64,000 nt of DNA. It comes from Macrostomum lignano (Eukaryota). The stretch spans positions 203,401 through 267,400 of the forward strand of contig NIVC01001568.1 in assembly GCA_002269645.1 (NCBI GenBank), read 5' to 3'. The notes beneath the pieces are model-generated. The model was not told where the DNA came from and made no database searches. It saw nothing but the letters and a program-made list of their open reading frames with translations. Each line of letters begins with the position of its first letter. Position 1 is the first letter of the stretch. Shown here piece by piece: positions 5,730 to 64,000 of the stretch. A program made the translations under genes and the position numbers.

Positions 5730-6109
5730 CTTGGAGCGGTCTCTGTGCTGGAAAAAACAGAACTTTAAAACGCATAGTTTGCAGATTGATTGATGCGACG
5801 TCTTGCTAAATGCTGCCGTATAAGCGGTCATATTTTACAGCAGCCTCTTAATTATTAAGCAAGAAAGACCAATACTGAAAATTAAAATGTGAAGGACACT
5901 ACTTTAAGTACAATGGCATTCGACTCTAATATTTTTAACGGATTTTTACACCAGTCACCGTTCCTGCAGTCTGTTTCCACACCAGAATTGGCCCTGCAGT
6001 CGGCGACTCCAGCTGGCAGCCTTTCAGTTCATCCGTGCCAAGTCGTACTGCGCTTTCAGGCGGTTTCAAAAGGTGCCGCTGTGGCTGACGCTAACGTTTC
6101 GTCGACTGC

Positions 6110-16108: not shown

Positions 16109-18159
<2,051 letters not shown>

Positions 18160-25362: not shown

Positions 25363-37407
<12,045 letters not shown>

Positions 37408-37669
37408 GGCAGCTGGCTCAGAGTCGCTGACTGAGAAATCTGTTTCAAAGCACAGAAGTGTCGGGCAGCGCCAGCTCTTTTCCAGGCTGCTGCCGAGCTT
37501 TTCTACTGGTACCTTCGCTCACTTCTGGCTGGCCCGTCTCTGATTGGCTGGTGGGAGCTGGGCAGGGCTGCTGCCCTCCCCGTGCACTCTAACCGGTTTT
37601 TGGATGTCGGTCGTCGGTGCAATCTTAGTGCAATCGGCGAAAAAGTTAATAAATCTCTTGGTGACCGCC

Positions 37670-38335
37670 CCTGTCTCTTGGTGAGCGCCCGTCTCTTGGT
37701 GAGCACCCCTGTCTCTCTTAGTGGGCGCCTCTGTCTCTCTTAGTGGGCGCCTCTGTCTCTCTTAGTGGGCGCCTCTGTCTCTTAGTGAGCGCCTGTCTCT
37801 TAGTGGGCGCCTCTGTCTCTTAGTGAGCGCTTGTCTCTTAGTGGGCGCCTCTGTCTCTTAGTGAGCGCTTGTCTCTTAGTGGGCGCCTCTGTCTCTTAGT
37901 GGGCGCCTCTGTCTCTTAGCGGGCGCTTCTGTCTCTCTTAGTGGGCGCCTCTGTCTCTTAGCGGGCGCCTCTGTCTCTCTTAGTGGGCGCCTCTGTCTCT
38001 CTTAGTGGGCGCCTCTGTCTCTCTTAGTGGGCGCCTCTGTCTCTCTTAGCGGGCGCCTCTGTCTCTTAGCGGGCGCCTCTGTCTCTTAGCGGGCGCCTCT
38101 GTCTCTTAGCGGGCGCCTCTGTCTCTTAGCGGGCGCCTCTGTCTCTTAGCGGGCGCCTCTGTCTCTCTTAGCGGGCGCCTCTGTCTCTTAGCGGCCGCCT
38201 CTGTCTCTTAGCGGGCGCCTCTGTCTCTTAGCGGGCGCCTCTGTCTCTTAGCGGGCGCCTCTGTCTCTTAGTGGGCGCCTCTGTCTCTTAGCGGGCGCTT
38301 CTGTCTCTCTTAGCGGGCGCCTCTGTCTCTTAGTG
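37670..38335. repeat. Minisatellite, 20/22-bp unit GGGCGCCTCTGTCTCTTAG(C/T)
   Basis: Direct tandem copies upstream of the NCKX ATG. Confidence 0.95.
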
Positions 38336-40724: not shown

Positions 40725-41100
40725 TCTCAGTAGCATTGAGTTCCCCACTTCCAACACCATTGAGTCCCGCACTCCTAACACTCTAATACAATTTAGTCCC
40801 TGCGCTCCCAACACTAATACAATTTATTCCTTCACTCTCACCATTGAGTCCCGCACTCTCAACACCAACATTGAGTCCCGCACTCTCAACACCAACATTG
40901 AGTCCCGCACTCTCAACACCACCATTGAGTCCCGCACTCTCAACACCAACATTGAGTCCCGCACTCTCAACACCAACATTGAGTCCCGCACTCTCAACAC
41001 CACCATTGAGTCCCGCACTCTCAACACCAACATTGAGTCCCGCACTCCCAAGGCTCCAACATCATTGAGTCCCGTACTCCAACACCATTGAGTCCCACCG
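40725..41100. repeat. Minisatellite, 27-bp unit CATTGAGTCCCGCACTCTCAACACCAA
   Basis: Direct tandem copies; an isolated partial copy at ~41345-41380. Confidence 0.92.
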
Positions 41101-41532
41101 GACACACTAAAATAGGGGTCAAACAACGCGTAGGCACACCAAGACAGGTTTCTGGCTCGTTTTTCTTCGTCAGTCAGCCACAGTCACGCGCCGTCCTCTC
41201 CCACCACTCTTAGTTTGCAGACGTTTCTTATACTAGTATGCTGTAATTTCCTCTATGGCGACCTTTTCGAGCTATGTGAGAAATTTAACGATTCAAATCT
41301 TTATCTGTCTACTTTTCTCAGTAGCATAAATTTGAATCTCTCACACCACACTCCAACACCATTGAGTCCCGCACTCCAACGCGATGATAGTTATAGATGC
41401 AGAACTACAACGTAATAAAGATAATAGGTTTGTGACAAGCACTGCAAGTACGAGTATGAAGTTTGGTTTAAGAAGATGGAGCCTCAGTCATATCCTAATT
41501 ATTCAGTTTGAGTTTCAGGCAGAAAACAGAAA

Positions 41533-44500
41533 TCAGCGAGGTCCGCGGCAGAGCGGCTGATGGTCGTAGACCTCCTCGGCAGAGTCGAACGCCCGAACGC
41601 AGAGCCAGCAGAAGTGGCAGTGACACCTGACGCAGGTCATGTGATTGCAGCCGGCATTTTTCTCGATGTGCACCCGGCACCGCGGGCACTGCTTGCGATT
41701 GCGCGAGTCAGCGGTCAGCCACGTCTGCGGGAAATCCGGTTTGCGGAATCGGTAGTACGAGCTCGTATTTTGCTTGCAGATCTGGGAGAAACGGCATGCT
41801 CTCGAGCTTCTACTTACAGTACGAAGCTTGGTAATGAGCGGGAGCAGTAATGGCTGTGCTACTCTTATTTTCTTTGCCTATCTTAGCGTCCGTCTGTTTT
41901 AGCGCCTGTGTGTACATCTCCTGCCTGTCTGCCTTAGTGTCCGAGAGTCTTTGTGTCTTAGAGCTTAGTCCTAGATTCTGTTTTAGTATCTGCCCATCTT
42001 AGTGTGTGCAACAGTGTCAGTCTGTCAAAAAAACACAATGCATAACACAAAAAGCCTCGAATGGCAAGCAGGCTACTAGCAGTAGCGGGCTGCAGCCAAT
42101 CAGAACAAACTTGAAGTCCGTAGTCCGGATTCGCCCTGATCTCCTTGGCGGTCTTGCAGGTCAAGCCGACGTGGCTGAAGTATTGACAACTGAAATTACG
42201 GAAAAAATCCGATTTGAAAACAAATCGAAATTGACTAGCAGAAGCATTTTTATTCACGAGAGGCTGCTCACTCCAGACAGAAGGTTCCGCGACAGACTTT
42301 GCAGCGGCTCTCCCTGACGGCGGCCTCTTTGAAGTCGCGCAGCAGGCCGGGACAGTCGGGCGCCGGGCAGAACTGCAGACAGCTGGCCGGCAAATTCACG
42401 TGACGCTTCAGGGCGGGTCCAAGAAGGCGGCGCATCAGCTGCTCTCGTTCGGCTGGGCTGGGCGCGCGGTCAAGGATGTCCAGCCCCACGTGGAACGGTT
42501 GGCCGCAGCCCTGAGGCAGGTCAAAGGTGAAAGTGTGGAAAATGGGATGACACGGAGGATGGGAGAATTGGGAGCGGGATTATATTAGAGAAGACATTAT
42601 CCATTCGAGTTTTACTTCAGCAGCACACAGCAGAGGCACATCGGCAGCGGAGGCCAGCTGCAGGTCCAGGCAATCCGTGCAGTAGACGTGTCCGCACAAT
42701 GCCAGGGTGGTGGCGGCCTCAGTGCCCGCTGGCGCGAAGCACACGGGGCACTCCAGCTTCACGGTGCCAGGCACAGCAACCGCTGTGGCGTTCAGTGCTG
42801 CAGCAGCCGCGGCGGTCGCTTCCTCCTCAGCGAGACGTTCAACGGCATCAGCGGCGGCGGCCACAGCGTCGGCGTTCACTCCAAACAGAGTCAGCGTCCT
42901 GCTGTCGCCTAGTTCGAGCTCGGCAGTGACAGACTCGTCGCCCAGTTTGGACAAATCTCTGCCGAATGTCTTCAATAGGCGACGGATGAGGCCGCGAGGG
43001 CGATGAGCTCCAGCCAGAGAGATTTCGCGCAGGCTGAGTGCCTCTCGCTCCGTCAAGTAGCTGTGAAGCGGAGTTCTCAAAGTTAATTTAAAGTATCAGA
43101 CAGGACTGCGTGTACTTCTAAGAATATCGGCTACTATGGTTTATATTTAACAGGTGAGCACGTGACTACGGCACGACCACAGCAACTGGTTGCGTGTACA
43201 TTGTCAAACGGTGAAAATCTCGATTCTCGAATACCTATGCAAGTGTATGTACTCAGAGTAAGTTAGTGGAAGAAGCATTTTGAGCTTCTATATTTGTATT
43301 TAAAAGTAAGATTCGAACTCGGAATAGGCCCAGATCGATTTTCTGTGTCTTAATACTTTTCGTCACCTCGTAACCGAAACAAAGTATAAATATAAGCTAC
43401 TGTCCTAAGCAAGTTACAACCAACTATTATTATCTAATCGTTCACTTACTTGTTGATGATAATCTGGCACCGGCTTTTGACTGAGTCGGTACCATAGATG
43501 CTCAAGCACTCGCGCCGTCTGTCGAATATGGCGTGCGACAGTTCCGGAAGACGCTTGCGCAGCTCAGACTCCGACCTGGCCAGCAGAAGGCTTCTGAGAG
43601 CGTCATTCCTGCTGCAGTCCAGCTCGTACGGCATCAGCGACTTTCTCAGGTGCTGATAGGTGAAGGACCAGGTGGTGACATCCTGTGTGTCGACGTCAAT
43701 TTTTACCTTTTTCACTTCGACTCCACGATGTTTCTCACGGTAGTCCGTATTTATATTAATTGACACAGGGTTAGCTCGCAGCATATTTTGAATAGCAGTA
43801 GGGAACAGCGAACTCCGCTTCTCAATGTCCCGCTTCACTTCAAGCAGTAGAGGCTCTGAGGCAGAAAAAATTTCGCTGGAAACAATTAGCGGAGGAAAAA
43901 TTAACTCGAACTTTGAGCCAGCGAATGCGGACGCCTTGTAAGCATTTTGCTTTGCCAGGAATATACTTTTTCGTTCTCGGCCGCGAGCGAGGTGACCATG
44001 CGACCAATTAGACAGATTTGCCAAAACAAAACCTTTCAGCTGTTTAAACTCCCTCGCAAACACAATGTAGTCGTCATCGTATCTGAAGCAAATCGTCACT
44101 TGCCAGTCAAAGAAGCCAGGATTCGGTGGATCCCGAATCACAAATTGATAGTTTTCCTCATCATCTACAAATTCCGAACTGAATATGGCTCTTAAAATTT
44201 CAAGCACTCGCGCGCCGGCGGCCTCCTTTGATAAGGCATTATCTTGGTGCTCGCGGCGCATCGTAACTCTCGGATTGATAGAGTCCAGCAGCACAGCAGA
44301 GCGAGCAAGCTCATTAGCAATAACACCTTCATCGATCCATAACGGCACGTCAAAAATGATTAGTTTTTCAGGATCTCTCTTGTCAAGGGCCATTTTACTT
44401 GCCCAAAAGCTGTTGCTGAGTGACAGAGAAGTTACATGTTCAAGAACGCTGCTAGCATCTTCCGGATTGTCGAATGAAACATTGGCAAAACCTGTAGGGT

Positions 44501-47500
44501 ACCGGCGAGGAAAAGTGAGCCGCAGCTTTAGCTCGTTCAAGTCGCAGGTTTGCTGTCTGTCCGTGCTATTAGAGTACGAATGTGGCTTTATCTGGGCTAA
44601 ATACGCCACCTCAGATGCATTTAGCTTTTCAACTAGTTTCTGAGCGACGACTGGCGACTCGGCTATTAGAAACTTGCCCTTTTCATTAACTTGAATTTCA
44701 CCGAATTCGTGACCGTACTTTGTAGCAACGGCGTTGAGCAACGGGATTGAAATGGCTTGATTCGGCATCCGTGCCATCAATTTGACAGCGCTGGATTCGC
44801 CGGTGAGGTTCAGCTGAGAGATAACGAATCCCGGAGCAAGCCGAATATGGCATGGTAGCTGGGTCTGATCAGGGGTCAGAGACGTCAAAGAGCACAGAGT
44901 GTCAACAGTTTCTTTAATGAAATCGTCTGTCATCGCCCTAGCGGCTGCCAGACAAGAAGCTGGCTCGCATACAATGTCAACAAAGTGAAGTTCAAAGTTG
45001 CAGTGAACTTCAAACAACTTTGGTTTAAGCTTCTCTTTCACATTTTCTGTCAGTTTATTTAAAGCGACGCGGCCACGGCCGACAAGCCGCTTCATGACTT
45101 CCGTGCTGACTGGCATGATGCGCGTGACTGTTCTGAAGATGGCCTCGCTAGTCAAATTTCGATCGGAGAGCCACTCAGGAGACACCGGTGTAATATTTAG
45201 TAAATAAGTTTGCTCTGTCTCAAGCAATTTGGTGTACACAGCGAACGGGATGTTGACGGCGTTGCTAAACACTGAGGATGGATGAATTTTCAATAGCTGG
45301 CCAGTGCTCACTTCAACAAAGCCAATTCGAGGATTGCCCGAGTAGGCGCACAGCTTATCTGAGAAAACTCGATAGATGCACTCCTGGACAGCGGAAGCAA
45401 AATTTCTATCATCCGAAAAAGTTTCAGACACTTGCATCTTGAGGTCGTACTTTAGTGCACGCTGCAAGTCGGCGACCTTCTCATTAACTGAGCGCATCGA
45501 CTTGTTGTTAACGCAGTTTTTCACTGACCATTTCGTTCTCAAGTTATCCGGGCGAGATCGCCAATCTTTGAAAACTTGCAAGCTAGTGAGAAGATCGCCG
45601 TCATCAGAGGCATAAAACTCTTTGGTCTTTGTAGCATCTTGACGCTCAGCATCTGTCTTGCCTCTAAAGAAGACTTGTCCCGATAAGGTGATGAGCGAAG
45701 CCAGAACCATTCCTTCCATTGCCAGGTTATTTTCGTAGAGAAGCAAAATCATTTTAGCAAGGCGCGGCTCGGCCGGTATTTTCGCAATCTTTTTGCCCAA
45801 TTCTGTCAGCTGACCTTCGCTGAATGCGCCAATGAATTCCAGCGCGCTCATTGCACTGTTCAGGCCCTGGCGCGACGGCGGCGTCAAATAGTCAAACTCA
45901 AGCGGATTCAATCCAAGCTCCAGAATTCGGATGGCGACTCCAGATAAATCGATGCGCTGTATCTCTGGCACAGTTGACTCGCTCATTGCCTCGTACTCCG
46001 CCTGAGTGTAAAGTCGATAGCAGCAACCGTTTTGAGTTCTACCAGCCCGGCCTTTTCTTTGATCGGCGCTGTTGCGCGAGATCTCGCCTACAACGAGAGC
46101 GTCCATGTTCCTGACAGGGTCGAATGCGTTTTGCTTGGAGAGCCCGGAGTCAACGACAACAACAACGCCCGGAATTGTTAGAGAAGTTTCGGCGCAATTT
46201 GTCGCAAAAATTACTTTTCTGGAGTTTTTGTCTTTTACCTCCTCCATTGCCAGCTGTTGATCCTCTGGCTGCAGCTGCCCGTGCAGAGGATAAGAGGGTA
46301 TTTTACTCTGCGTGCCAATTTTTCTCTGAAACAACGCACTAGCATTCTCTGTGTCTTTGGGAGTAGTCAGAAAAACCAGCATGTTTCCATGCGGAACATT
46401 GCGATCCAAACACAGTTCTACCACTTTGTCAACTGCTGTTTCAAAGTATTTTTCAGTCTTGTCCATCTTTTTGTCGCTATAGTGAACGTCAACTCGATAC
46501 ACTCGTCCAGGAATTTGGGCATGAGCTTTTGAGAAATCATCAAAAAAACTCAGAAACAGGTAGGGATTGATGGTGGCAGAAGTTATGAGCACCTTTAGTT
46601 CTGGTCGCAGTTTCAGGGCCTGCTTCAACAGACCAATGATAAGATCGGTGTGCAGGTTCCGCTCATGCGCCTCGTCCACTACAATGCAGCTGTATTCAGA
46701 GAGTCTCGGGTCGCTAACACACAATTTCAACAGTTGAAAGTCCGTCATGAAGACAATTTTAGTTTCTTCTTTAACTGCCTTGCCGCCAACCATTGAAGCC
46801 ACTAAGCCGCCATTTTTGCAGTTCATCTGCTTGGCCACGTACTCGGAGAGGCTTCTGGCAGCAAGGCGTCTAGGCTGCGTGCAGGCGATCTTGCCCGGAA
46901 ATAACCCGGAAGTCTGCAAATACTGCACGATCTGTGTGCTCTTGCCAGAGCCAGTCTCGGCCACGAACACGCTTACCTGGTTGTCGAGAACCAAGTTCAC
47001 AATCTCCTCCTTATATGGGTAGATAGGTAAGCCAAGCAGGGACTGCCTCTCACTCTGTTGCAGACTATTGACGATTTGGTGAATCCTTTCCACAGTGCCT
47101 TCATCGCCAGAGTCCAAGTCCTTCAGCTTTACCTTGCACTCGTGACAGTCGCGCTCAAACACCTTGGTGGCTCTAGTGATTTCTTCCACTTTGTCGCCAG
47201 CAAATTCATCATTATCCAGGATTTGACGGAGCTTAGTAGCAAGCTGTCGTGTTACACGCTTTTCAGCAGCATCGATTTTTTGCACAGCCTGCTTATTAGC
47301 ATCAGCAATCAGACGGGCAAGAACAGCTGCATCCACGCTCACATTGAGTGCCATTGCGATTGCAGCATCCATGCTGGGCCCTTTGCATTTAGTTTTCAGA
47401 AAACATTTCAGTGAGCCTTCAATCCATCTAGCCATGTCAATATTAGATGTATAGATGCGGCCAACAGTTGTATTTGGGCTGTACTCAAAGAATTCGATGC

Positions 47501-48367
47501 TACTAGCAGTGCAGCCTTCAATCATGCTAACTTTAGTGCAAACTGCTTCGCGTGATTCGCACAGATGTTCACTAGCATTGCTAGCTAGGCAGAGAGCAAT
47601 CACATGAAATTTACCTCGTTGACACTTTTGATTTTCCATAAACATATCCAATGTGCCTTTGGCACTTATAATATTAGACAAATTTCCAAAAAGCAGATCA
47701 GGACTTCGAGCTCTTTGTACAGGCCTTGGCTGACTAGCATTTGAAGATGGACCTAAAATTATCAAAAGAAATGGTTTTGTCAGAAAGTTTTAGTAATATA
47801 AAGTTAAAAACTTAAATTTAGTACTGAAATACTGATAATACATAAAACATGTGTACTAATAAATATACTTATATTCACTTTCAACCAAAACTAAATGGCA
47901 AATATGTTATAAAAAATACAACAATGGTTTTAGTACATACAAAGTAATTTAGAAATTTTTAAGCCTAATATTATTAATAAAAAATAAAATTTCAATTTTA
48001 TCATATAAGAAACATGAATTATTAGATGAAATTCTGATAAAGTTAAAAAGCTTTATAAACTAAGACTTAAAAATAATATATATATTAAGGAATAGATCAT
48101 AAATACAAGCGTAATACTAAAAATCTTTCTATAATCTGCATAAATCATGAATAGTGCTATTGAACCCAGATATGCAGTTTAAAAATAATGATGGATACTA
48201 TGATTAGACATTTAGTATAGGTGGATTTTAGCAAGAATTTGAGTTTTGAGTATCCTATTCCTAGTCCTAGATACAAAAAGGAATTATTAGTAGACTGCTT
48301 GGATTAAATAAAATTATGTTCACTTACTTGGATTATCCCACTTCCACCCACTTTTACTTCTGATCAT
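41533..48367 (-). CDS. DEAH-box RNA helicase fused to RRM/KH-like domains and a C-terminal RBR (RING1-IBR-RING2) E3 ligase, 1765 aa; exons 48367-48328, 47752-43450, 43060-42616, 42510-42272, 42189-42111, 41724-41533
   Basis: Helicase motifs GSGKST, TQPRRLAA, DEAH, SAT, TNCAETSLTIPG, QRKGRAGR and HA2 region. KH-like LVGRGR; RNP1-like GFANVSF. RING1 CPVC..CGHVYCTDC..C..GC; IBR CPAPDC..CKVC..FCLDC..H..C; RING2 CPRC..IEKNAGCNHMTC..C..FCWLC. Exon lengths sum to 5298 nt in phase. The first exon is less certain. Confidence 0.9.
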
Positions 48368-51300: not shown

Positions 51301-51419
51301 CACTTACGGTTGCCGGCGGCACTTCGTCGCTCGTAGAGGGGCTCAAAATTACAAACCACAGTATATATTTTATATTTTATACTTTATATTTTATATTTTT
51401 ATATATTTTACCACAGTAA

Positions 51420-54400
51420 AACATCATAGAAGCGTCATGTAAATATCATAGAAGCGTCATGTAAAAAATCATAGAAGCGTCATGTAAAAATCATAGAAGC
51501 GTCATGTAAAAAATCATAGAAGCGTCATGTAAAAATCATAGAAGCGTCATACAAAAATCATAGAAGCGTCATACAAAAATTATAGAAGCGTCATGTAAAA
51601 AATCATAGAAGCGTCATGTAAAAATCATAGAAGCGTCATACAAAACTCAGAGAAGCGTCATGTAAAAAATCATAAAAGCGTCATGTAAAAATCATAGAAG
51701 CGTCATGTAAATCATAGAAGCGTCATGTAAAAAATCATAGAAGCGTCATGTAAAAATCATAGAAGCGTCATGTAAAAATCATAGAAGCGTCATACAAAAA
51801 TCATAGAAGCGTCATGTAAAAATCATAGAAGCGTCATGTAAAAATCATAGAATCGTCATGTAAATCATAGAAGCGTCATGTAAATCATAGAAGCGTCATG
51901 TAAAAAATCATAGAAGCGTCATGTAAAAATCATAGAAGCGTCATGTAAAAATCATAGAAGCGTCATACAAAAATCATAGAAGCGTCATGTAAAAATCATA
52001 GAAGCGTCGTGTAAAAATCATAGAAGCGTCCTGTAAAAATCATAGAAGCGTCATGTAAAAATCAAAGAATCGTCATGTAAATCATAGAAGCGTCATGTAA
52101 AAAATCATAGAAGCGTCATAAAAATTATAGAAGCGTCATGTAAAAATCATAGAAGCGTCATACAAAAATCATAGAACCGTCATGTAAAAATCATAGAAGC
52201 GTCATACAAAAATCATAGAATCGTCATGTAAAAATCATAGAAGCGTCATGTAAAAATCATAGAAGCGTCATGTAAAAATCATAGAAGCGTCATGTAAAAA
52301 TCACAGAAGCGTCATGTCAAAAATCACAGAAGCGTCATGTAAAAAATCATAGAAGCGTCATAAAAATTATAGAAGCGTCATGTAAAAATCATAGAAGCGT
52401 CATACAAAAATCATAGAATCGTCATGTAAAAATCATAGAAGCGTCATGTAAAAATCATAGAAGCGTCGTGTAAAAATCATAGAAGCGTCATGTAAACGAT
52501 CATAAAAGCGTCATGTAAAAAATTATACAAGCGTCATGTAAATATCATAGAAGCGTCATGTAAAAAATCATAGAAGCGTCATAAAAAATTATAGAAGCGT
52601 CATGTAAACAATCATAGAAGCGTCATGTAAAAATCATAGAAGCGTCATGTAAACAGTCATAGAAGCGTCATGTAAAAAACCATAGAAGCGTCATGGAAAA
52701 AATCATAAAAGCGTCATGAAAAAATAATAGAAGCGTCATGTAAACAATCATAGAAGCGTCATGTAAAAATCATAGAAGCGTCATGTAAAAATCATAGAAG
52801 CGTCATGTAAAAAATCATAGAAGCGTCATGTAAATCATAGAAGCGTCATGTAAAAAATCATAGAAGCGTCATGTAAAAATCATAGAAGCGTCATGTAAAA
52901 ATCATAGAAGCGTCATGTACATCATAGAAGCGTCATGTAAAAAATCATAGAAGTGTCATGTAAAAATCATAGAAGCGTCATGTAAAAATCATAGAAGCGT
53001 CATACAAAAATTATAGAAGCGTCATGTAAAAAATCATAGAAGCGTCATGTAAAAATCATAGAAGCGTCATGTAAAAATCATAGAAGCGTCATACAAAAAT
53101 CACAGAATTGTCATGTAAAAATCATAGAAGCGTCCTGTAAAAATCACAGAAGCGTCATGTAAAAATCATAGAAGCGTCATGTAAAAATCATAGAAGCGTC
53201 GTGTAAAAATCATAGAAGTGTCCTGTAAAAATCACAGAAGCGTCATGTAAAAATCATAGAATCGTCATGTAAAAAATCATAGAAGCGTCATGTAAAAATC
53301 ATAGAAGCGTCATGTAAAAATCATAGAAGCGTCATGTAAAAATCATAGAAGCGTCATGTAAAAAATCATAGAGGCGTCATACAAAAATCATAGAAGCGTC
53401 ATGTAAATCATAGAAGCGTCATGTAAAAATCATAGAAGCGTCATGTAAAAATCATAGAAGCGTCATGTAAAAATCATAGAAGCGTCATACAAAAATCATA
53501 GAAGCGTCATGTAAAAATCATAGAAGCGTCATGTAAAAATCATAGAAGCGTCATGTAAAAATCATAGAAGCGTCATGTAAAAATCATAGAATCGTCATGT
53601 AAATCATAGAAGCGTCATGTAAAAAATCATAGAAGCGTCATAAAAATCATAGAAGCGTCATGTAAAAATCATAGAAGCGTCATAAAAAATCATAGAAGCG
53701 TCATGTAAAAATCATAGAAGCGTCATACAAAATCATAGAATCGTCATGTAAAAATCATAGAAGCGTCATGTAAAAGTCATAGAAGCGTCATGTAAAAAAC
53801 CATAGAAGCGTCATGGAAAAAATCATAAAAGCGTCATGAAAAAATAATAGAAGCGTCATGTAAAAATCATAGAAGCGTCATGTAAAAATCATAGAAGCGT
53901 CATGTAAAAATCATAGAAGCGTCATGTAAAAATCATAGAAGCGTCATGTAAAAAATCACAGAAGCGTCATGTAAATCATAGAAGCGTCATGTAAAAAATC
54001 ATAGAAGCGTCACAAAAATTATAGAAGCGTCATGTAAAAATCATAGAAGCGTCATACAAAAATCATAGAATCGTCATGTAAAAATCATAGAAGCGTCATG
54101 TAAAAATCATAGAAGCGTCATGTAAAAATCATAGAAGCGTCATGTAAAAATCATAGAAGCGTCATGTAAAATCATAGAAGCGTCATGTAAAAAATCATAG
54201 AAGCGTCATAAAAAATCATAGAAGCGTCATGTAAAAATCATAGAAGCGTCATGTAAACAATCATAGAAGCGTCATGTAAAAAACATAGAAGCGTCATGTA
54301 AAAAATCATAGAAGCGTCATGAAAAATCATAGAAGCGTCATGTAAAAATCATAGAAGCGTCATGTAAAAATCATAGAAGCGTCATGTAAAAATCATAGAA

Positions 54401-57400
54401 GCGTCATGTAAAAAATCATAGAAGCGTCATGTAAATCATAGAAGCGTCATGTAAAAATCATAGAAGCGTCATGTAAAAATCATAGAAGCGTCATACAAAA
54501 ATTATAGAAGCGATATGTACATCATAGAAGCGTCATGTAAAAAATCATAGAAGTGTCATGTAAAAATCATAGAAGCGTCATGTAAAAATCATAGAAGCGT
54601 CATACAAAAATCATAGAAGCGTCATGTAAAAAATCATAGAAGCGTCATGTAAAAATCATAGAAGCGTCATGTAAAAATCATAGAAGCGTCATGTACATCA
54701 TAGAAGCGTCATGTAAAAAATCATAGAAGTGTCATGTAAAAATCATAGAAGCGTCATGTAATCATAGAAGCGTCATGTAAAAAATCATAGAAGCGTCATG
54801 TAAAAATCATAGAAGCGTCATGTAAAAATCATAGAAGCGTCATGTAAAAATCATAGAAGCGTCATGTAAAAATCATAGAAGCGTCATGTAAAAAATCATA
54901 GAAGCGTCATGTAAAAATCATAGAAGCGTCATGTAAATCATAGAAGCGTCATGTAAAAAATCATAGAAGCGTCATGTAAAAATCATAGAAGCGTCATGTA
55001 AAAATCATAGAAGCGTCATAAAAATCATAGAAGCGTCATGTAAAAATCATAGAAGCGTCATGTAAAAATCATAGAAGCGTCATGTAAAAATCATAGAAGC
55101 GTCATGTAAAAATCATAGAAGCGTCATGTAAAAATCATAGAAGCGTCATGTAAAAATCATAGAAGCGTCATGTAAAAATCATAGAAGCGTCATGTAAAAA
55201 TCATAGAAGCGTCATGTAAAAATCATAGAAGCGTCATGTAAAAATCATAGAAGCGTCATGTAAAAATCATAGAAGCGTCATGTAAAAATCATAGAAGCGT
55301 CATGTAAAAAATCATAGAAGCGTCATGTAAATCATAGAAGCGTCATGTAAAAATCATAGAAGCGTCATGTAAAAATCATAGAAGCGTCATGTAAAAATCA
55401 TAGAAGCGTCATGTAAAAATCATAGAAGCGTCATGTAAAAATCATAGAAGCGTCATGTAAAAATCATAGAAGCGTCATGTAAAAATCATAGAAGCGTCAT
55501 GTAAAAATCATAGAAGCGTCATGTAAAAATCATAGAAGCGTCATGTAAAAATCATAGAAGCGTCATGTAAAAATCATAGAAGCGTCATGTAAAAATCATA
55601 GAAGCGTCATAAAAATCATAGAAGCGTCATGTAAAAATCATAGAAGCGTCATAAAAATCATAGAAGCGTCATGTAAAAATCATAGAAGCGTCATGTAAAA
55701 ATCATAGAAGCGTCATGTAAAAATCATAGAAGCGTCATGTAAAAATCATAGAAGCGTCATGTAAAAATCATAGAAGCGTCATGTAAAAATCATAGAAGCG
55801 TCATGTAAAAATCATAGAAGCGTCATGTAAAAATCATAGAAGCGTCATACAAAAATCATAGAAGCGTCATGTAAAAATCATAGAAGCGTCATGTAAAAAT
55901 CATAGAAGCGTCATGTAAAAATCATAGAAGCGTCATGTAAAAATCATAGAAGCGTCATGTAAAATCATAGAAGCGTCATGTAAAAAATCATAGAAGCGTC
56001 ATAAAAAATCATAGAAGCGTCATGTAAAAATCATAGAAGCGTCATGTAAACAATCATAGAAGCGTCATGTAAAAATCATAGAAGCGTCATGTAAAAATCA
56101 TAGAAGCGTCATGTAAAAATCATAGAAGCGTCATGAAAAAATCATAGAAGCGTCATGTAAAAATCATAGAAGCGTCATGTAAAAATCATAGAAGCGTCAT
56201 GTAAAAATCATAGAAGCGTCATGTCAAAAATCATAGAAGCGTCATGTAAATCATAGAAGCGTCATGTAAAAATCATAGAAGCGTCATGTAAAAATCATAG
56301 AAGCGTCATGTAAAAATCATAGAAGCGTCATGTAAAAATCATAGAAGCGTCATGTAAAAAATCATAGAAGCGTCATGTAAAAATCATAGAAGCGTCATGT
56401 AAAAATCATAGAAGCGTCATGTAAAAATCATAGAAGCGTCATGTAAAAAATCATAGAAGCGTCATGTAAAAATCATAGAAGCGTCATGTAAAAATCATAG
56501 AAGCGTCATGTAAAAATCATAGAAGCGTCATGTAAAAATCATAGAAGCGTCATGTAAAAATCATAGAAGCGTCATGTAAAAATCATAGAAGCGTCATGTA
56601 AAAATCATAGAAGCGTCATGTAAAAATCATAGAAGCGTCATGTAAAAATCATAGAAGCGTCATGTAAAAATCATAGAAGCGTCATGTAAAAAATCATAGA
56701 AGCGTCATGTAAAAATCATAGAAGCGTCATGTAAAAATCATAGAAGCGTCATGTAAAAATCATAGAAGCGTCATGTAAAAATCATAGAAGCGTCATGTAA
56801 AAATCATAGAAGCGTCATGTAAAAATCATAGAAGCGTCATGTAAAAATCATAGAAGCGTCATGTAAAAATCATAGAAGCGTCATGTAAAAATCATAGAAG
56901 CGTCATGTAAAAATCATAGAAGCGTCATGTAAAAATCATAGAAGCGTCATAAAAATCATAGAAGCGTCATGTAAAAATCATAGAAGCGTCATAAAAATCA
57001 TAGAAGCGTCATGTAAAAATCATAGAAGCGTCATGTAAAAATCATAGAAGCGTCATGTAAAAATCATAGAAGCGTCATGTAAAAATCATAGAAGCGTCAT
57101 GTAAAAATCATAGAAGCGTCATGTAAAAATCATAGAAGCGTCATGTAAAAATCATAGAAGCGTCATGTAAAAATCATAGAAGCGTCATGTAAAAATCATA
57201 GAAGCGTCATGTAAAAATCATAGAAGCGTCATGTAAAAATCATAGAAGCGTCATGTAAAAAATCATAGAAGCGTCATGTAAAAATCATAGAAGCGTCATG
57301 TAAAAATCATAGAAGCGTCATGTAAAAATCATAGAAGCGTCATGTAAAAATCATAGAAGCGTCATGTAAAAATCATAGAAGCGTCATGTAAAAATCATAG

Positions 57401-60400
57401 AAGCGTCATGTAAAAATCATAGAAGCGTCATGTAAAAATCATAGAAGCGTCATGAAAAAATCATAGAAGCGTCATGTAAAAATCATAGAAGCGTCATGTA
57501 AAAATCATAGAAGCGTCATGTAAAAATCATAGAAGCGTCATGTAAAAAATCATAGAAGCGTCATGTAAAAATCATAGAAGCGTCATGTAAAAATCATAGA
57601 AGCGTCATGTAAAAATCATAGAAGCGTCATGTAAAAATCATAGAAGCGTCATGTAAAAATCATAGAAGCGTCATGTAAAAATCATAGAAGCGTCATGTAA
57701 AAATCATAGAAGCGTCATGTAAAAATCATAGAAGCGTCATGTAAAAATCATAGAAGCGTCATGTAAAAAATCATAGAAGCGTCATGTAAAAATCATAGAA
57801 GCGTCATGTAAAAATCATAGAAGCGTCATGTAAAAATCATAGAAGCGTCATGTAAAAATCATAGAAGCGTCATGTAAAAATCATAGAAGCGTCATGTAAA
57901 AATCATAGAAGCGTCATGTAAAAATCATAGAAGCGTCATGTAAAAATCATAGAAGCGTCATGTAAAAATCATAGAAGCGTCATGTAAAAATCATAGAAGC
58001 GTCATGTAAAAATCATAGAAGCGTCATGTAAAAATCATAGAAGCGTCATGTAAAAATCATAGAAGCGTCATGTAAAAATCATAGAAGCGTCATGTAAAAA
58101 TCATAGAAGCGTCATGTAAAAATCATAGAAGCGTCATGTAAAAATCATAGAAGCGTCATGTAAAAAATCATAGAAGCGTCATGTAAAAATCATAGAAGCG
58201 TCATGTAAAAATCATAGAAGCGTCATGTAAAAATCATAGAAGCGTCATGTAAAAATCATAGAAGCGTCATGTAAAAATCATAGAAGCGTCATGTAAAAAT
58301 CATAGAAGCGTCATGTAAAAATCATAGAAGCGTCATGTAAAAATCATAGAAGCGTCATGTAAAAAATCATAGAAGCGTCATGTAAAAATCATAGAAGCGT
58401 CATGTAAAAATCATAGAAGCGTCATGTAAAAATCATAGAAGCGTCATGTAAAAAATCATAGAAGCGTCATGTAAAAATCATAGAAGCGTCATGTAAAAAT
58501 CATAGAAGCGTCATGTAAAAATCATAGAAGCGTCATGTAAAAAATCATAGAAGCGTCATGTAAAAATCATAGAAGCGTCATGTAAAAATCATAGAAGCGT
58601 CATGTAAAAATCATAGAAGCGTCATGTAAAAATCATAGAAGCGTCATGTAAAAATCATAGAAGCGTCATGTAAAAATCATAGAAGCGTCATGTAAAAATC
58701 ATAGAAGCGTCATGTAAAAATCATAGAAGCGTCATGTAAAAATCATAGAAGCGTCATGTAAAAATCATAGAAGCGTCATGTAAAAATCATAGAAGCGTCA
58801 TGTAAAAATCATAGAAGCGTCATGTAAAAATCATAGAAGCGTCATGTAAAAATCATAGAAGCGTCATGTAAAAATCATAGAAGCGTCATGTAAAAATCAT
58901 AGAAGCGTCATGTAAAAATCATAGAAGCGTCATGTAAAAATCATAGAAGCGTCATGTAAAAATCATAGAAGCGTCATGTAAAAATCATAGAAGCGTCATA
59001 AAAATCATAGAAGCGTCATGTAAAAATCATAGAAGCGTCATGTAAAAATCATAGAAGCGTCATGTAAAAATCATAGAAGCGTCATGTAAAAATCATAGAA
59101 GCGTCATGTAAAAATCATAGAAGCGTCATGTAAAAAATCATAGAAGCGTCATAAAAATCATAGAAGCGTCATGTAAAAATCATAGAAGCGTCATAAAAAA
59201 TCATAGAAGCGTCATGTAAAAATCATAGAAGCGTCATGTAAAAAATCATAGAAGCGTCATGTAAAAATCATAGAAGCGTCATGTAAAAATCATAGAAGCG
59301 TCATGTAAAAATCATAGAAGCGTCATGTAAAAATCATAGAAGCGTCATGTAAAATAGAAGCGTCATGTAAAAATCATAGAAGCGTCACAAAAATCATAGA
59401 AGCGTCATGTAAAAATCATAGAAGCGTCATAAAAATCATAGAAGCGTCATGTAAAAATCATAGAAGCGTCATGTAAAAATCATAGAAGCGTCATGTAAAA
59501 ATCATAGAAGCGTCATGTAAAAAATCATAGAAGCGTCATGTAAAAAATCATAGAAGCGTCATGTAAAAATCATAGAAGCGTCATGTAAAAATCATAGAAG
59601 CGTCATGTAAAAATCATAGAAGCGTCATGTAAAAATCATAGAAGCGTCATGTAAAAATCATAGAAGCGTCATGTAAAAATCATAGAAGCGTCATGTAAAA
59701 ATCATAGAAGCGTCATGTAAAAATCATAGAAGCGTCATGTAAAAATCATAGAAGCGTCATGTAAAAATCATAGAAGCGTCATGTAAAAATCATAGAAGCG
59801 TCATGTAAAAATCATAGAAGCGTCATGTAAAAATCATAGAAGCGTCATGTAAAAAATCATAGAAGCGTCATGTAAAAATCATAGAAGCGTCATGTAAAAA
59901 TCATAGAAGCGTCATGTAAAAAATCATAGAAGCGTCATGTAAAAATCATAGAAGCGTCATGTAAAAATCATAGAAGCGTCATGTAAAAATCATAGAAGCG
60001 TCATGTAAAAATCATAGAAGCGTCATGTAAAAATCATAGAAGCGTCATGTAAAAATCATAGAAGCGTCATGTAAAAATCATAGAAGCGTCATGTAAAAAT
60101 CATAGAAGCGTCATGTAAAAATCATAGAAGCGTCATGTAAAAATCATAGAAGCGTCATGTAAAAATCATAGAAGCGTCATAAAAATCATAGAAGCGTCAT
60201 GTAAAAATCATAGAAGCGTCATGTAAAAATCATAGAAGCGTCATGTAAAAATCATAGAAGCGTCATGTAAAAATCATAGAAGCGTCATGTAAAAATCATA
60301 GAAGCGTCATGTAAAAATCATAGAAGCGTCATGTAAAAATCATAGAAGCGTCATGTAAAAATCATAGAAGCGTCATGTAAAAATCATAGAAGCGTCATGT

Positions 60401-63400
60401 AAAAATCATAGAAGCGTCATGTAAAAATCATAGAAGCGTCATGTAAAAATCATAGAAGCGTCATGTAAAAATCATAGAAGCGTCATGTAAAAATCATAGA
60501 AGCGTCATGTAAAAATCATAGAAGCGTCATGTAAAAATCATAGAAGCGTCATGTAAAAATCATAGAAGCGTCATGTAAAAATCATAGAAGCGTCATGTAA
60601 AAATCATAGAAGCGTCATGTAAAAATCATAGAAGCGTCATGTAAAAATCATAGAAGCGTCATGTAAAAATCATAGAAGCGTCATGTAAAAATCATAGAAG
60701 CGTCATGTAAAAATCATAGAAGCGTCATGTAAAAATCATAGAAGCGTCATGTAAAAATCATAGAAGCGTCATGTAAAAATCATAGAAGCGTCATGTAAAA
60801 ATCATAGAAGCGTCATGTAAAAAATAGAAGCGTCATGTAAAAATCATAGAAGCGTCATGTAAAAAATCATAGAAGCGTCATGTAAAAATCATCATAGAAG
60901 CGTCATGTAAAAATCATAGAAGCGTCATGTAAAAATCATAGAAGCGTCATGTAAAAATCATAGAAGCGTCATGTAAAAATCATAGAAGCGTCATGTAAAA
61001 AATCATAGAAGCGTCATGTAAAAATCATAGAAGCGTCATGTAAAAATCATAGAAGCGTCATGTAAAAATCATAGAAGCGTCATGTAAAAATCATAGAAGC
61101 GTCATGTAAAAATCATAGAAGCGTCATGTAAAAATCATAGAAGCGTCATGTAAAAATCATAGAAGCGTCATGTAAAAATCATAGAAGCGTCATGTAAAAA
61201 TCATAGAAGCGTCATGTAAAAATCATAGAAGCGTCATGTAAAAATCATAGAAGCGTCATGTAAAAATCATAGAAGCGTCATGTAAAAATCATAGAAGCGT
61301 CATGTAAAAATCATAGAAGCGTCATAAAAAATCATAGAAGCGTCATGTAAAAATCATAGAAGCGTCATGTAAAAATCATAGAAGCGTCATGTAAAAATCA
61401 TAGAAGCGTCATGTAAAAATCATAGAAGCGTCATGTAAAAATCATAGAAGCGTCATGTAAAAATCATAGAAGCGTCATGTAAAAATCATAGAAGCGTCAT
61501 GTAAAAATCATAGAAGCGTCATGTAAAAATCATAGAAGCGTCATGTAAAAATCATAGAAGCGTCATGTAAAAATCATAGAAGCGTCATGTAAAAATCATA
61601 GAAGCGTCATGTAAAAATCATAGAAGCGTCATGTAAAAATCATAGAAGCGTCATGTAAAAATCATAGAAGCGTCATGTAAAAATCATAGAAGCGTCATGT
61701 AAAAATCATAGAAGCGTCATGTAAAAATCATAGAAGCGTCATGTAAAAATCATAGAAGCGTCATGTAAAAATCATAGAAGCGTCATGTAAAAATCATAGA
61801 AGCGTCATGTAAAAATCATAGAAGCGTCATGTAAAAATCATAGAAGCGTCATGTAAAAATCATAGAAGCGTCATGTAAAAATCATAGAAGCGTCATGTAA
61901 AAATCATAGAAGCGTCATGTAAAAATCATAGAAGCGTCATGTAAAAATCATAGAAGCGTCATGTAAAAATCATAGAAGCGTCATGTAAAAATCATAGAAG
62001 CGTCATGTAAAAATCATAGAAGCGTCATGTAAAAAATCATAGAAGCGTCATGTAAAAATCATAGAAGCGTCATGTAAAAATCATAGAAGCGTCATGTAAA
62101 AATCATAGAAGCGTCATGTAAAAATCATAGAAGCGTCATGTAAAAATCATAGAAGCGTCATGTAAAAATCATAGAAGCGTCATGTAAAAATCATAGAAGC
62201 GTCATGTAAAAATCATAGAAGCGTCATGTAAAAATCATAGAAGCGTCATGTAAAAATCATAGAAGCGTCATGTAAAAATCATAGAAGCGTCATGTAAAAA
62301 TCATAGAAGCGTCATGTAAAAATCATAGAAGCGTCATGTAAAAATCATAGAAGCGTCATGTAAAAATCATAGAAGCGTCATGTAAAAAATAGAAGCGTCA
62401 TGTAAAAATCATAGAAGCGTCATAAAAATCATAGAAGCGTCATGTAAAAATCATAGAAGCGTCATAAAAAATCATAGAAGCGTCATGTAAAAATCATAGA
62501 AGCGTCATGTAAAAATCATAGAAGCGTCATGTAAAAATCATAGAAGCGTCATGTAAAAATCATAGAAGCGTCATGTAAAAATCATAGAAGCGTCATGTAA
62601 AAATCATAGAAGCGTCATGTAAAAATCATAGAAGCGTCATGTAAAAATCATAGAAGCGTCATACAAAAATCATAGAAGCGTCATGTAAAAATCATAGAAG
62701 CGTCATGTAAAAATCATAGAAGCGTCATGTAAAAATCATAGAAGCGTCATGTAAAAATCATAGAAGCGTCATGTAAAAATCATAGAAGCGTCATGTAAAA
62801 AATCATAGAAGCGTCATGTAAAATATAGAAGCGTCATGTAAAAATCATAGAAGCGTCATGTAAAAATCATAGAAGCGTCATGTAAAAATCATAGAAGCGT
62901 CATGTAAAAATCATAGAAGCGTCATGTAAAAATCATAGAAGCGTCATGTAAAAATCATAGAAGCGTCATGTAAAAAATCATAGAAGCGTCATGTAAAAAT
63001 CATAGAAGCGTCATGTAAAAATCATAGAAGCGTCATGTAAAAAATCATAGAAGCGTCATGTAAATCATAGAAGCGTCATGTAAATCATAGAAGCGTCATG
63101 TAAAAAATCATAGAAGCGTCATACAAAAATATGAAGCGATATGTAAAAATCATAGAAGCGTCATGTAAAAATCATAGAAGTGCATGTAAAAATCATAGAA
63201 GCGTCATGTAAAATCATAGAAGCGTCAGTAAAAAAAATCATAGAAGCGTCATGTAAAAATCATCAGAAGCGTCATGTAAAATCATAGAAGCGTCATGTAA
63301 AAATCATAGAAGCGTCATGTAATCATAGAAGCGTCATGTAAAAATCATAGAAGTGTCATGTAAAAATCATAGAAGCGTCATGTAAAAATCATAGAAGCGT

Positions 63401-64000
63401 CATGTAAAAATCATAGAAGCGTCATGTAAATCATAGAAGCGTCATGTAAATCATAGAAGCGTCATGTAAAACATAGAAGCGTCATGTAAAACATAGAACG
63501 TCATGTAAAAATCATAGAAGCTCATGTAAAATCATAGAAGCGTCATGTAAAAATCATAGAATGTCATGTAAAAATCATAGAAGCGTCATAAAAAATCATA
63601 GAAGCGTCATGTAAAAATCATAGAAGCGTCATGTAAAAATCATAGAAGCGTCATGTAAAAATCATAGAAGCGTCATGTAAATCATAGAAGCGTCATGTAA
63701 AAATCATAGAAGTGTCATGTAAAAATCATAGAAGCGTCATGTAAAAATCATAGAATCGTCATGTAAAAATCATAGAAGCGTCATGTAAAAATCATAGAAG
63801 CGTCATGTAAAAATCATAGAAGCGTCATGTAAAAATCATAGAAGCGTCATGTAAAAATCATAGAAGCGTCATGTAAAAAATCATAGAATCGTCATGTAAA
63901 AATCATAGAAGCGTCATGTAAAAATCATAGAAGCGTCATGTAAAAATCATAGAAGCGTCATGTAAAAATCATAGAAGCGTCATGTAAAATCATAGAACGT
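51420..64000. repeat. Satellite DNA, 22-bp unit AAAAATCATAGAAGCGTCATGT, >12.5 kb, continues past the window end
   Basis: Roughly 570 units by length; no ORFs in the supplied track. Confidence 0.99.

What the first reader, a model, noticed from the sequence alone, without database searches (positions are those of the whole stretch)
41533..48367. RNA helicase - RBR ubiquitin ligase fusion in an animal genome
One polypeptide couples an intact DEAH motor and RRM/KH-like RNA-binding modules to a complete RING1-IBR-RING2 with the catalytic Cys (GCNHM) and no Ariadne autoinhibitory tail. The architecture matches plant DEAH11/DEAH12-type proteins and is absent from vertebrate DHX families as far as I know. 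It could ubiquitinate proteins on bound RNA (RNP quality control or antiviral sensing), and helicase engagement might gate the ligase (inference).
Basis: partly seen in the sequence, partly recalled or inferred. Interest (0 to 1): 0.7.

Follow-up and report, generated by a model that had tools for sequence, protein, structure and literature searches.

The report
Flatworm DEAH helicase fused to RBR ligase
The window holds an intact flatworm (Macrostomum lignano) gene that joins an RNA helicase to an RBR-type ubiquitin ligase; the gene is real, but it is already in GenBank and belongs to an old, widespread family described since 2002-2010 whose biochemistry nobody has yet tested.

Summary
On the minus strand, 48367 (ATG) to 41533 (TGA) is a six-exon, GT-AG gene. 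It encodes a 1765-aa protein with these parts:
- a complete DEAH helicase core with all motifs;
- a roughly 560-aa chain of small RRM/KH-like alpha/beta domains;
- a DEAH11-type KH domain;
- a full RING1-IBR-RING2 with the catalytic Cys (C1728, GCNHM) and no Ariadne tail.

My model is 100% identical to GenBank PAA66336.1 (BOX15_Mlig007882g1, Macrostomum lignano). That annotation was built from RNA-seq-guided transcripts, which supports a single transcript.

The architecture and the DEAH11/DEAH12 match are right, but this is not a new kind of animal protein. It is the "Helicase/Plant I" RBR subfamily (Marin), reported in both animals and plants with losses in several animal lineages. About 100 of the best 120 database relatives share the fused layout; the named ones come from cnidarians, molluscs, annelids, nemerteans, chelicerates and crustaceans.

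RNA-gated ubiquitination remains inference, because I found no biochemical study of any member.

One side finding: a 96%-identical duplicate locus lacks the 503 bp that carry the RING2 exon.

Novelty: already known. Interest: low to moderate.

The parts
48328..48367 (-). Exon 1: ATG at 48367, encodes MIRSKSGWKWDNP and the first base of the Ser14 codon. Donor CCAA|GTAAGT.
43450..47752 (-). Exon 2 (4303 nt, aa 14-1448): N-terminal region, the whole DEAH helicase core and the RRM/KH-like linker modules.
   Evidence: it lies in an uninterrupted 1439-codon ORF
47397..47699 (-). aa 32-132: possible ferredoxin/RRM-like beta-alpha-beta-beta-alpha-beta unit. Low confidence, no Pfam hit.
   Evidence: pLDDT about 50-69; Foldseek found nothing significant
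45162..47057 (-). aa 246-877: DEAH/RHA helicase core (RecA1, RecA2, winged helix, ratchet, OB fold). Walker A K284, DEAH 373-376, SAT 405, QRKGRAGR 578.
   Evidence: (E 1.5e-110 to Prp22/DHX8, Prp16, Prp43/DHX15 over the whole core)
43452..45131 (-). aa 888-1447: chain of small alpha/beta domains. Stretches align with RRM_1, RRM_DEAH11 (aa ~1096-1180), a further RRM_1 stretch (aa ~1219-1259) and KH_DEAH11_2nd (aa ~1399-1445) of homologues.
   Evidence: AF2 pLDDT 81.5; local KH matches 3vke_B and 6y2d_B, prob 0.99; whole-query E-values weak
42616..43060 (-). Exon 3 (aa 1448-1596): KH_DEAH11 domain and most of RING1. An alternative acceptor lies 15 nt upstream at 43075.
42823..43029 (-). aa 1459-1527: DEAH11-type KH domain (PF24471), directly upstream of RING1.
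   Evidence: E 2.3e-15, 56.4 bits, cut-off 27
42493..42750 (-). aa 1552-1602: RING1, C3HC4 with all eight ligands. Spans intron 3.
42272..42510 (-). Exon 4 (aa 1597-1676): end of RING1, the helical linker and the first part of the IBR.
42111..42189 (-). Exon 5 (aa 1676-1702): end of the IBR (CQYFSHVGLTC).
41533..41724 (-). Exon 6 (aa 1703-1765 plus TGA at 41533-41535): RING2/Rcat, CPRCRVHIEKNAGCNHMTC...CWLC. Catalytic Cys1728 codon is 41647-41649. An alternative acceptor 57 nt upstream at 41781 adds 19 aa (used in UniProt A0A1I8FYW5).
41325..41827 (-). The 503-bp segment (end of intron 5, all of exon 6, the stop and the start of the 3' UTR) that is missing from the duplicate M. lignano locus NIVC01000957.1.

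Best explanation
This is the Macrostomum lignano gene BOX15_Mlig007882g1 (PAA66336.1). It is a member of the ancient helicase-RBR family, known as Marin's 'Helicase/Plant I' RBR subfamily and as the DEAH11/DEAH12 type.

Shown here:
- One spliced mRNA encodes, in order, a possible N-terminal RRM-like unit, a helical stalk, a complete Prp22/Prp43-like DEAH helicase core, a chain of RRM/KH-like domains, a DEAH11-type KH domain and a complete RING1-IBR-RING2.
- The RBR carries the active-site Cys-x-His (C1728, H1730) and has no C-terminal Ariadne domain.

Inferred from what is established for DEAH helicases and RBR ligases:
- The RRM/KH modules and the helicase tunnel hold single-stranded RNA, and the core translocates 3' to 5' using ATP.
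- RING1 docks an E2~ubiquitin, ubiquitin passes to C1728 as a thioester, and from there it goes to lysines of proteins held on the same RNA or RNP, or to the enzyme itself.

The substrates, the biological process, and whether RNA or ATP binding switches the ligase on are all unknown.
For: - The gene model has canonical splice sites and is 100% identical to a GenBank protein. That annotation is RNA-seq-guided (PMC5730564).
- All helicase motifs are present, and the full core matches Prp22/DHX8, Prp16 and Prp43 at E about 1e-110.
- KH_DEAH11 scores above Pfam's cut-off.
- The RBR aligns end to end with ARIH2/ARIH1, including IEKNGGCNHM.
- In a set of the window protein plus 49 relatives, 50 of 50 keep DEAHER. 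At least 47 of 50 keep the RING2 Cys; the other three are the RING2-deleted duplicate and two models that end before RING2. Both activities therefore appear conserved together.
- About 100 of the best 120 relatives carry helicase plus IBR domains on one chain.
- dN/dS is 0.24 against the duplicate copy.
- The family is described in the literature as ancient and shared by animals and plants (PMC2904391, PMC3087547).
Against: - No helicase or ligase activity has been measured for any family member that I could find. The only functional paper found is a cotton DEAH12 knockout study that does not address ubiquitination.
- Walker A begins with Ala instead of the family's Gly. This is still within [AG]xxxxGK[ST].
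- The middle and N-terminal domains have no significant sequence match to RRM or KH families in this protein itself, and Foldseek E-values for the models are weak.
- The duplicate copy has lost RING2 yet keeps an open helicase frame, so the ligase may be dispensable for part of the function.
- Transcript support is short-read based, not long-read.
Confidence: 0.72

Rival explanations
1. The ligase is autoinhibited and is released only when the helicase or the RRM/KH modules engage RNA. The protein then acts in RNP quality control or in antiviral or transposon RNA sensing.
For: - All characterised RBRs are autoinhibited and need an activating partner (established knowledge).
- Here the usual inhibitory Ariadne tail is absent, so another part of the protein would have to do this job.
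- Relatives show lineage-specific multiplication: several paralogues per species in Littorina, Batillaria, Physella, Aplysia and spiders, with two Physella proteins on contigs of the same length.
- Some relatives carry N-terminal NYN RNase or PARP14-like RRM additions, patterns often seen in defence genes.
Against: - There are no biochemical or expression data for any member.
- The only expression mention I found, in a red-coral heat-stress preprint, groups it with spliceosome terms.
- M. lignano shows only the recent duplicate pair rather than an expansion.
- I made no structural model of the RBR in the context of the helicase.
Confidence: 0.2
2. The protein is mainly a helicase. The RBR is vestigial, serves only as a zinc-binding interaction module, or only tags the protein itself for turnover.
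For: - The duplicate locus lost the whole RING2 exon yet keeps a 1435-codon open frame, with dN/dS 0.24 against the window copy.
- Several database relatives are modelled without an IBR (about 19 of the best 120).
- The literature calls helicase RBRs 'often dispensable' (PMC2904391).
Against: - In the window copy every zinc ligand and the Cys-x-His of RING2 are intact.
- The RING2 Cys is kept in at least 47 of 50 family members compared, drawn from several phyla.
- The duplicates are only about 3% diverged, so relaxed selection on the truncated copy would not yet show.
- IBR-less relatives may be truncated gene models.
Confidence: 0.15
3. There are two separate genes or transcripts, a helicase and a small RBR ligase, that merely lie next to each other.
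For: An older annotation lists a 336-aa RBR-only protein (UniProt A0A1I8FYW5 = P0122).
Against: - P0122 has no start Met. It begins two codons into exon 3, so it is a partial model.
- Exon 2 ends without a stop codon at a consensus donor.
- The KH_DEAH11 domain continues the KH series across the intron.
- The RNA-seq-guided GenBank model spans all six exons.
- The fusion is conserved in roughly 100 relatives from several phyla.
Confidence: 0.04
4. The gene is a pseudogene, a contaminant, or a plant-derived horizontal transfer.
For: NCBI names relatives 'DEAH12, chloroplastic-like'. The region is very rich in repeats.
Against: - The 5298-nt CDS is intact across six exons.
- The best hits are all animals.
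- The locus is colinear with a second M. lignano contig, including introns and the flanking satellite.
- dN/dS is 0.24.
- The 'chloroplastic' label is inherited from the name of the Arabidopsis protein.
Confidence: 0.02

Closest known systems
Helicase ('Plant I') subfamily of RBR ubiquitin ligases; Arabidopsis DEAH11/DEAH12 (At4g01020, At5g10370), soybean GmHELRP1/2
   Same: - The domain order is the same: an N-terminal DEAH helicase (DEAD, Helicase_C, HA2, OB), a spacer of several hundred residues made of RRM/KH-type modules, a DEAH11-type KH domain, then RING1-IBR-RING2 at the very C-terminus.
- Total length is about 1700-1800 aa.
- Basis: Pfam KH_DEAH11 hit and literature descriptions.
   Different: - It is an animal (flatworm) member, and its linker is very divergent (14-19% identity to other members).
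- RBD_DEAH11, RRM_DEAH11 and KH_DEAH11_1st/2nd are not detectable by sequence in this protein.
- I could not retrieve a plant sequence, so no direct alignment or tree with plant proteins was made.
Invertebrate 'ATP-dependent RNA helicase DEAH12, chloroplastic-like' proteins (Nematostella, Acropora, Crassostrea, Aplysia, Homarus, spiders, Lineus, Paralvinella)
   Same: - The architecture is the same fusion.
- Identity is 30-42% over the best local alignments, which cover mainly the helicase part (E down to 1e-158).
- They share the conserved helicase motifs and the RING2 Cys.
   Different: - Many relatives add recognisable N-terminal RRM_1 repeats, and some add a NYN RNase or PARP14-type RRM.
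- The M. lignano protein has only a low-confidence RRM-like unit there.
- It sits at 30-42% identity to every other relative listed; only the M. lignano duplicate is closer.
Ariadne RBR ligases ARIH2/ARIH1 (HHARI)
   Same: They are the best solved-structure match for the RBR (E 5.5e-19 and 1.4e-14), aligned from RING1 to RING2 and including IEKNGGCNHM with the catalytic Cys.
   Different: There is no Ariadne autoinhibitory domain and no cullin-related N-terminal parts. A helicase lies upstream instead. The protein ends 21 residues after CWLC.
Spliceosomal and ribosome-biogenesis DEAH helicases Prp22/DHX8, Prp16/DHX38, Prp43/DHX15
   Same: The whole helicase core, from RecA1 to the OB fold, matches at E about 1e-110 to 1e-99.
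   Different: Those helicases carry no E3 module and are driven by G-patch or spliceosomal partners. Whether this protein uses a G-patch activator is unknown.
Rad5/HLTF/SHPRH (SNF2 translocase with an embedded RING). This is a functional analogy from general knowledge, not tested here.
   Same: A nucleic-acid motor and a ubiquitin ligase sit on one chain, so the ligase acts where the motor is loaded.
   Different: Those proteins use DNA rather than RNA, a plain RING rather than a thioester-forming RBR, and an unrelated helicase superfamily branch.

Membership tests
Helicase/Plant I RBR subfamily (DEAH11/DEAH12 type) | DEAH-box helicase core (DEAD, Helicase_C, HA2, OB) in the N-terminal half | tested here: met
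   Pfam DEAD, Helicase_C and OB_NTP_bind score above cut-off, HA2_N is weak. Motifs I-VI are present. The core matches Prp22/Prp43 at E 1e-110.
Helicase/Plant I RBR subfamily (DEAH11/DEAH12 type) | RING1-IBR-RING2 supradomain at the C-terminus of the same polypeptide | tested here: met
   The spliced model equals GenBank PAA66336.1. Pfam IBR and IBR_1 hit. The RBR aligns end to end with ARIH2.
Helicase/Plant I RBR subfamily (DEAH11/DEAH12 type) | DEAH11-type KH domain (PF24471) immediately upstream of RING1 | tested here: met
   E 2.3e-15, 56.4 bits against a cut-off of 27.
Helicase/Plant I RBR subfamily (DEAH11/DEAH12 type) | Long spacer between helicase and RBR built of RRM_DEAH11 and KH_DEAH11_1st/2nd modules | tested here: inconclusive
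   A spacer of about 670 aa is present. This protein gives no significant Pfam hit there. The AF2 model is confident (pLDDT 81.5) and made of small alpha/beta domains. Foldseek gives local KH matches but weak overall E-values. The stretches align with RRM_DEAH11, RRM_1 and KH_DEAH11_2nd of homologues.
Helicase/Plant I RBR subfamily (DEAH11/DEAH12 type) | RBR-domain phylogeny groups the protein with plant and animal Helicase-subfamily members | not tested
   No plant or fungal member could be retrieved. The search with the KH+RBR fragment returned only three unrelated RBRs. Membership on this point rests on the literature and the Pfam domain.
RBR (RING-between-RING) E3 ligases in general | Full zinc-ligand sets in RING1, IBR and RING2, plus the catalytic Cys-x-His in RING2 | tested here: met
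   Read directly from the sequence and aligned to the ARIH2 catalytic region.
RBR (RING-between-RING) E3 ligases in general | E2-dependent ubiquitin thioester on the RING2 Cys and transfer to substrate | not testable with these tools
   This needs a biochemical assay. None has been published for this family as far as I found.
Ariadne subfamily of RBRs | C-terminal Ariadne (autoinhibitory) domain after RING2 | tested here: not met
   The protein ends 21 residues after the CWLC of RING2, and no Ariadne Pfam hit appears. It is therefore not an Ariadne, although its RBR is most similar to theirs among solved structures.
ARA54/RNF14 subfamily of RBRs | RWD domain N-terminal to the RBR | tested here: not met
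   Only a sub-threshold RWD hit was found (E 0.017, 15.8 bits against a cut-off of 22.8).
DEAH/RHA RNA helicases | RNA-stimulated NTPase and 3'-5' translocation, often G-patch activated | not testable with these tools
   Only motif and fold conservation can be shown.

The most novel reading that the evidence does not exclude
The helicase-RBR family may be an RNA-switched E3. On this reading, binding or translocation on particular RNAs (viral, transposon-derived or stalled RNPs) by the DEAH core and the KH/RRM chain releases an otherwise autoinhibited RBR, which then ubiquitinates proteins on that RNA. This would be an activation mode not known for any RBR. Vertebrates, insects and nematodes would have lost it. 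M. lignano would offer a natural ligase-plus and ligase-minus gene pair with which to dissect it.
Probability: 0.12. Interest if true: 0.7.

Novelty: already known. Interest (0 to 1): 0.27.

Why it matters
As a discovery it matters little. The protein is already deposited (PAA66336.1), and the family was catalogued in RBR surveys from 2002 to 2010.

The residual value is practical.
- The family joins two well-understood enzymatic machines, yet I found no biochemical characterisation of it in any organism.
- No vertebrate, insect or nematode member appeared among the relatives I saw, so the standard animal models may lack it.
- M. lignano is a transgenic, RNAi-amenable animal that has it.
- M. 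lignano carries both an intact copy and a near-identical copy without RING2, which could serve as a built-in comparison.

The report also records that the GenBank protein of the sister copy (PAA74316.1) ends in read-through intron sequence, because its RING2 exon is missing from that contig.

Tried and rejected
- My first gene model used upstream acceptors at 43075 and 41781, giving 1789 aa. I rejected it after alignment with relatives showed 5- and 19-residue insertions. The refined model equals PAA66336.1.
- A search of the protein database with the KH+RBR fragment P0122, meant to reach plant and fungal members, returned three unrelated small RBRs. The word prefilter probably failed on this divergent, Ala-rich query.
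- Marin 2009 (J Mol Evol), which lists the animal lineages with and without helicase RBRs, is not held in the library. I relied on Marin's 2010 papers, which summarise it.
- No paper mentions the locus tags Mlig007882 or Mlig002714, so I obtained no expression data.
- Foldseek on the multi-domain linker model and on the N-terminal model gave no match at E <= 0.001. I use only the local KH and ferredoxin-like matches, and only as weak support.
- An RWD domain, as in ARA54, was considered and rejected as sub-threshold.
- The pseudogene, contamination, horizontal-transfer and two-gene readings were considered and rejected (see the rival explanations).
Full report
**What is in the sequence**

The region holds one large gene on the minus strand. 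A 1439-codon open frame (43446-47765) is followed, at lower coordinates, by short frames that read as RING1, IBR and RING2. I joined them through canonical GT-AG introns to get a continuous CDS.

Alignment of the C-terminus with relatives showed that two of my first acceptor choices inserted 5 and 19 extra residues. With the downstream acceptors the model has these exons on the minus strand:
- exon 1, 48367-48328
- exon 2, 47752-43450
- exon 3, 43060-42616
- exon 4, 42510-42272
- exon 5, 42189-42111
- exon 6, 41724-41533

This gives 5298 nt and 1765 aa. The ATG is at 48367 and the TGA at 41533-41535.

**Identity of the gene**

The refined translation is 100% identical to P0121, which is GenBank PAA66336.1 ('hypothetical protein BOX15_Mlig007882g1', Macrostomum lignano) and UniProt A0A267EXY8 ('RNA helicase'). 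The window is therefore flatworm DNA, and the gene is already deposited.

The GenBank annotation of this assembly (Mlig_3_7) was produced from a genome-guided RNA-seq transcriptome. It combined StringTie/TACO output with a de novo assembly, and gene boundaries came from trans-splicing and poly(A) reads (PMC5730564). So the six-exon helicase-plus-RBR model is transcript-derived. This is short-read evidence for a single mRNA, not long-read proof.

An older 336-aa 'RBR-type E3 ubiquitin transferase' entry (P0122) begins two codons into exon 3 and has no Met. It is a partial model and not evidence for a separate gene.

**Domain anatomy**

Pfam results for the full protein:
- DEAD, Helicase_C and OB_NTP_bind score above their cut-offs.
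- HA2_N is weak.
- KH_DEAH11 (PF24471) scores 56 bits against a cut-off of 27.
- The RING-finger models give only sub-threshold hits on RING1.
- IBR and IBR_1 hit, the latter on RING2.

Helicase motifs are complete: AETGSGKS (K284), TQPRR, DEAH 373-376, SAT, TNCAETS and QRKGRAGR. The core (aa ~246-877) matches solved Prp22/DHX8, Prp16 and Prp43/DHX15 structures over its full length, from RecA1 to the OB fold, at E 1e-110 to 1e-99.

The RBR (aa 1552-1761) aligns end to end with ARIH2 (E 5.5e-19) and ARIH1. The alignment includes IEKNAGCNHMTC against IEKNGGCNHMQC, so C1728 is the catalytic Cys and H1730 the Cys-x-His histidine. The chain ends 21 residues after CWLC, and there is no Ariadne domain.

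**The linker and the N-terminus**

The roughly 560-aa linker has no significant Pfam hit in this protein. An AlphaFold2 model built on a 50-sequence alignment is confident (mean pLDDT 81.5). It shows a string of small alpha/beta domains.

Foldseek against the PDB gave no match at E <= 0.001 for the multi-domain query. It did give local matches to single KH domains (PCBP1 KH1 and FUBP1 KH2, prob 0.99, TM about 0.67 on the target) and to ferredoxin/RRM-type folds. In the alignment, linker stretches correspond to the RRM_1, RRM_DEAH11 and KH_DEAH11_2nd hits of Acropora and Littorina relatives.

The N-terminal 245 aa model less well (pLDDT 69). There is a beta-alpha-beta-beta-alpha-beta unit at aa 32-132 at low confidence, then long confident helices at aa 141-252. 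Foldseek found nothing significant for it.

**How common the architecture is**

The search with exon 2 hit the 8000-candidate ceiling. About 100 of the best 120 clusters carry helicase domains together with IBR, and most also carry KH_DEAH11. Named sources are:
- Cnidaria: Nematostella, Acropora, Oculina.
- Mollusca: more than 15 genera.
- Annelida: Paralvinella.
- Nemertea: Lineus.
- Chelicerata: Tachypleus and six spider genera.
- Crustacea: Homarus, Meganyctiphanes.

Many are named 'DEAH12, chloroplastic-like'. No vertebrate, insect or nematode appears in that list, but the list is not exhaustive.

In a set of the window protein plus 49 relatives, DEAHER is present in all 50. The RING2 Cys is present in at least 47; the three exceptions are the RING2-deleted duplicate and two models that end before RING2. 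Both enzymatic centres are therefore conserved together.

Pfam now holds a curated DEAH11 domain set: RBD_DEAH11, RRM_DEAH11, KH_DEAH11_1st, KH_DEAH11_2nd and KH_DEAH11.

**What the literature says**

Marin's RBR surveys define a 'Helicase' (also 'Plant I') subfamily. [quoted passage not shown] The soybean survey describes the same layout: proteins over 1700 aa, with DEAD, Helicase_C and HA2 separated from the RBR by about 750 residues.

I found no biochemical study of any member. A 2026 cotton paper reports a DEAH12 knockout phenotype and an interaction with a NAC factor, without addressing ubiquitination. Clam DEAH12 has been used only as a phylogenetic marker. A red-coral heat-stress preprint lists it among spliceosome-term genes.

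**Mechanism**

- Shown: an intact motor, an intact thioester-type ligase, and RNA-binding-type modules between them, on one chain, conserved across phyla.
- Inferred from established DEAH and RBR mechanisms: ATP-driven 3'-5' movement on single-stranded RNA; RING1 docking of E2~Ub; transfer to C1728 and then to lysines of proteins on the same RNP, or to the enzyme itself.
- Not known: the substrates, the pathway, and whether RNA engagement switches the ligase on.

The gating idea is reasonable, because all studied RBRs are autoinhibited and the Ariadne-type inhibitor is absent here. It has no direct support. Paralogue multiplication and NYN or PARP14-like additions in molluscs and chelicerates hint at defence-type evolution. 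That is only a hint.

**A side result on the duplicate copy**

The closest database protein, P0001 (PAA74316.1, 97% identical), lies on contig NIVC01000957.1. That contig is colinear with the window at about 96% identity, including introns and the upstream 22-bp satellite.

It lacks 503 bp corresponding to window 41325-41827. That segment holds the whole RING2 exon, the stop codon and the start of the 3' UTR, and tblastn finds no RING2 anywhere in the locus. The deposited protein of that copy therefore ends in read-through intron sequence and has no catalytic Cys.

The large exon of both copies is open, with dS 0.063, dN 0.015 and dN/dS 0.24. The assembly is known to be redundant because of the DV1 karyotype. 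So this is either a homeologue or duplicate pair, or possibly an assembly difference.

**Verdict**

This is an already-known gene of an already-described family. Its interest lies only in the fact that nobody has yet worked out what helicase-RBR proteins do.

Noticed in passing
window 41325-41827 versus L001 12790-12800 (NIVC01000957.1): A 96%-identical, colinear duplicate locus in M. lignano lacks the 503 bp that carry the RING2 exon and the stop codon. Its GenBank protein (PAA74316.1) has no catalytic Cys and ends in read-through intron sequence. The helicase frame of that copy is still open (dN/dS 0.24).
   Followed up: yes
window 51416-63997: A 22-bp satellite (GTAAAAATCATAGAAGCGTCAT) runs for about 574 copies at 95% match to the end of the window. 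It starts roughly 3 kb upstream of the gene's ATG. The same satellite flanks the duplicate locus.
   Followed up: partly
window 4133-41087 (many sites): The window is unusually dense in minisatellites with periods of 16-29 bp and up to about 40 copies, for example at 6104-7129, 9562-10224, 27855-28661, 29441-30473, 31858-32414, 32828-33351 and 37654-38335. It also has long tetranucleotide arrays: (GTCT)n at 16533-17414 and (ATCT)n at 36043-36707.
   Followed up: no
window 40842-41087 and about 41340-41390: A 27-bp minisatellite lies just downstream of the gene. A related unit (GGGACTCAATGGTGTTGGAGTG) sits in the 3' UTR, within about 60 bp of one breakpoint of the 503-bp difference between the two gene copies. 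It may be relevant to how that deletion arose.
   Followed up: no
window 23374-24435 (+) and 34809-35501 (-): An intact 353-aa Mos1/mariner-type transposase ORF (HTH_48, HTH_32, Transposase_1/DDE_3) and a second, shorter mariner-like remnant.
   Followed up: partly
window 11503-13820 (-): Exons encoding PA and transferrin-receptor-like dimerisation domains. This is probably a glutamate carboxypeptidase II / transferrin-receptor-like (M28) gene upstream in the window.
   Followed up: partly
window 43060/43075 and 41724/41781: In-frame alternative acceptors lie 15 nt and 57 nt apart at exons 3 and 6. The upstream exon-6 acceptor is used in UniProt A0A1I8FYW5 and would insert 19 residues between IBR and RING2. 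Homology favours the downstream sites.
   Followed up: partly
relatives P0059, P0076, P0089, P0109, P0110, P0114: Some chelicerate members (horseshoe crab, spiders) carry an N-terminal NYN ribonuclease domain. One unnamed ENA relative (P0076) carries three N-terminal RRMs plus a PARP14-type RRM. Several species have multiple paralogues, and two Physella proteins lie on contigs of the same length (478,394 bp).
   Followed up: no
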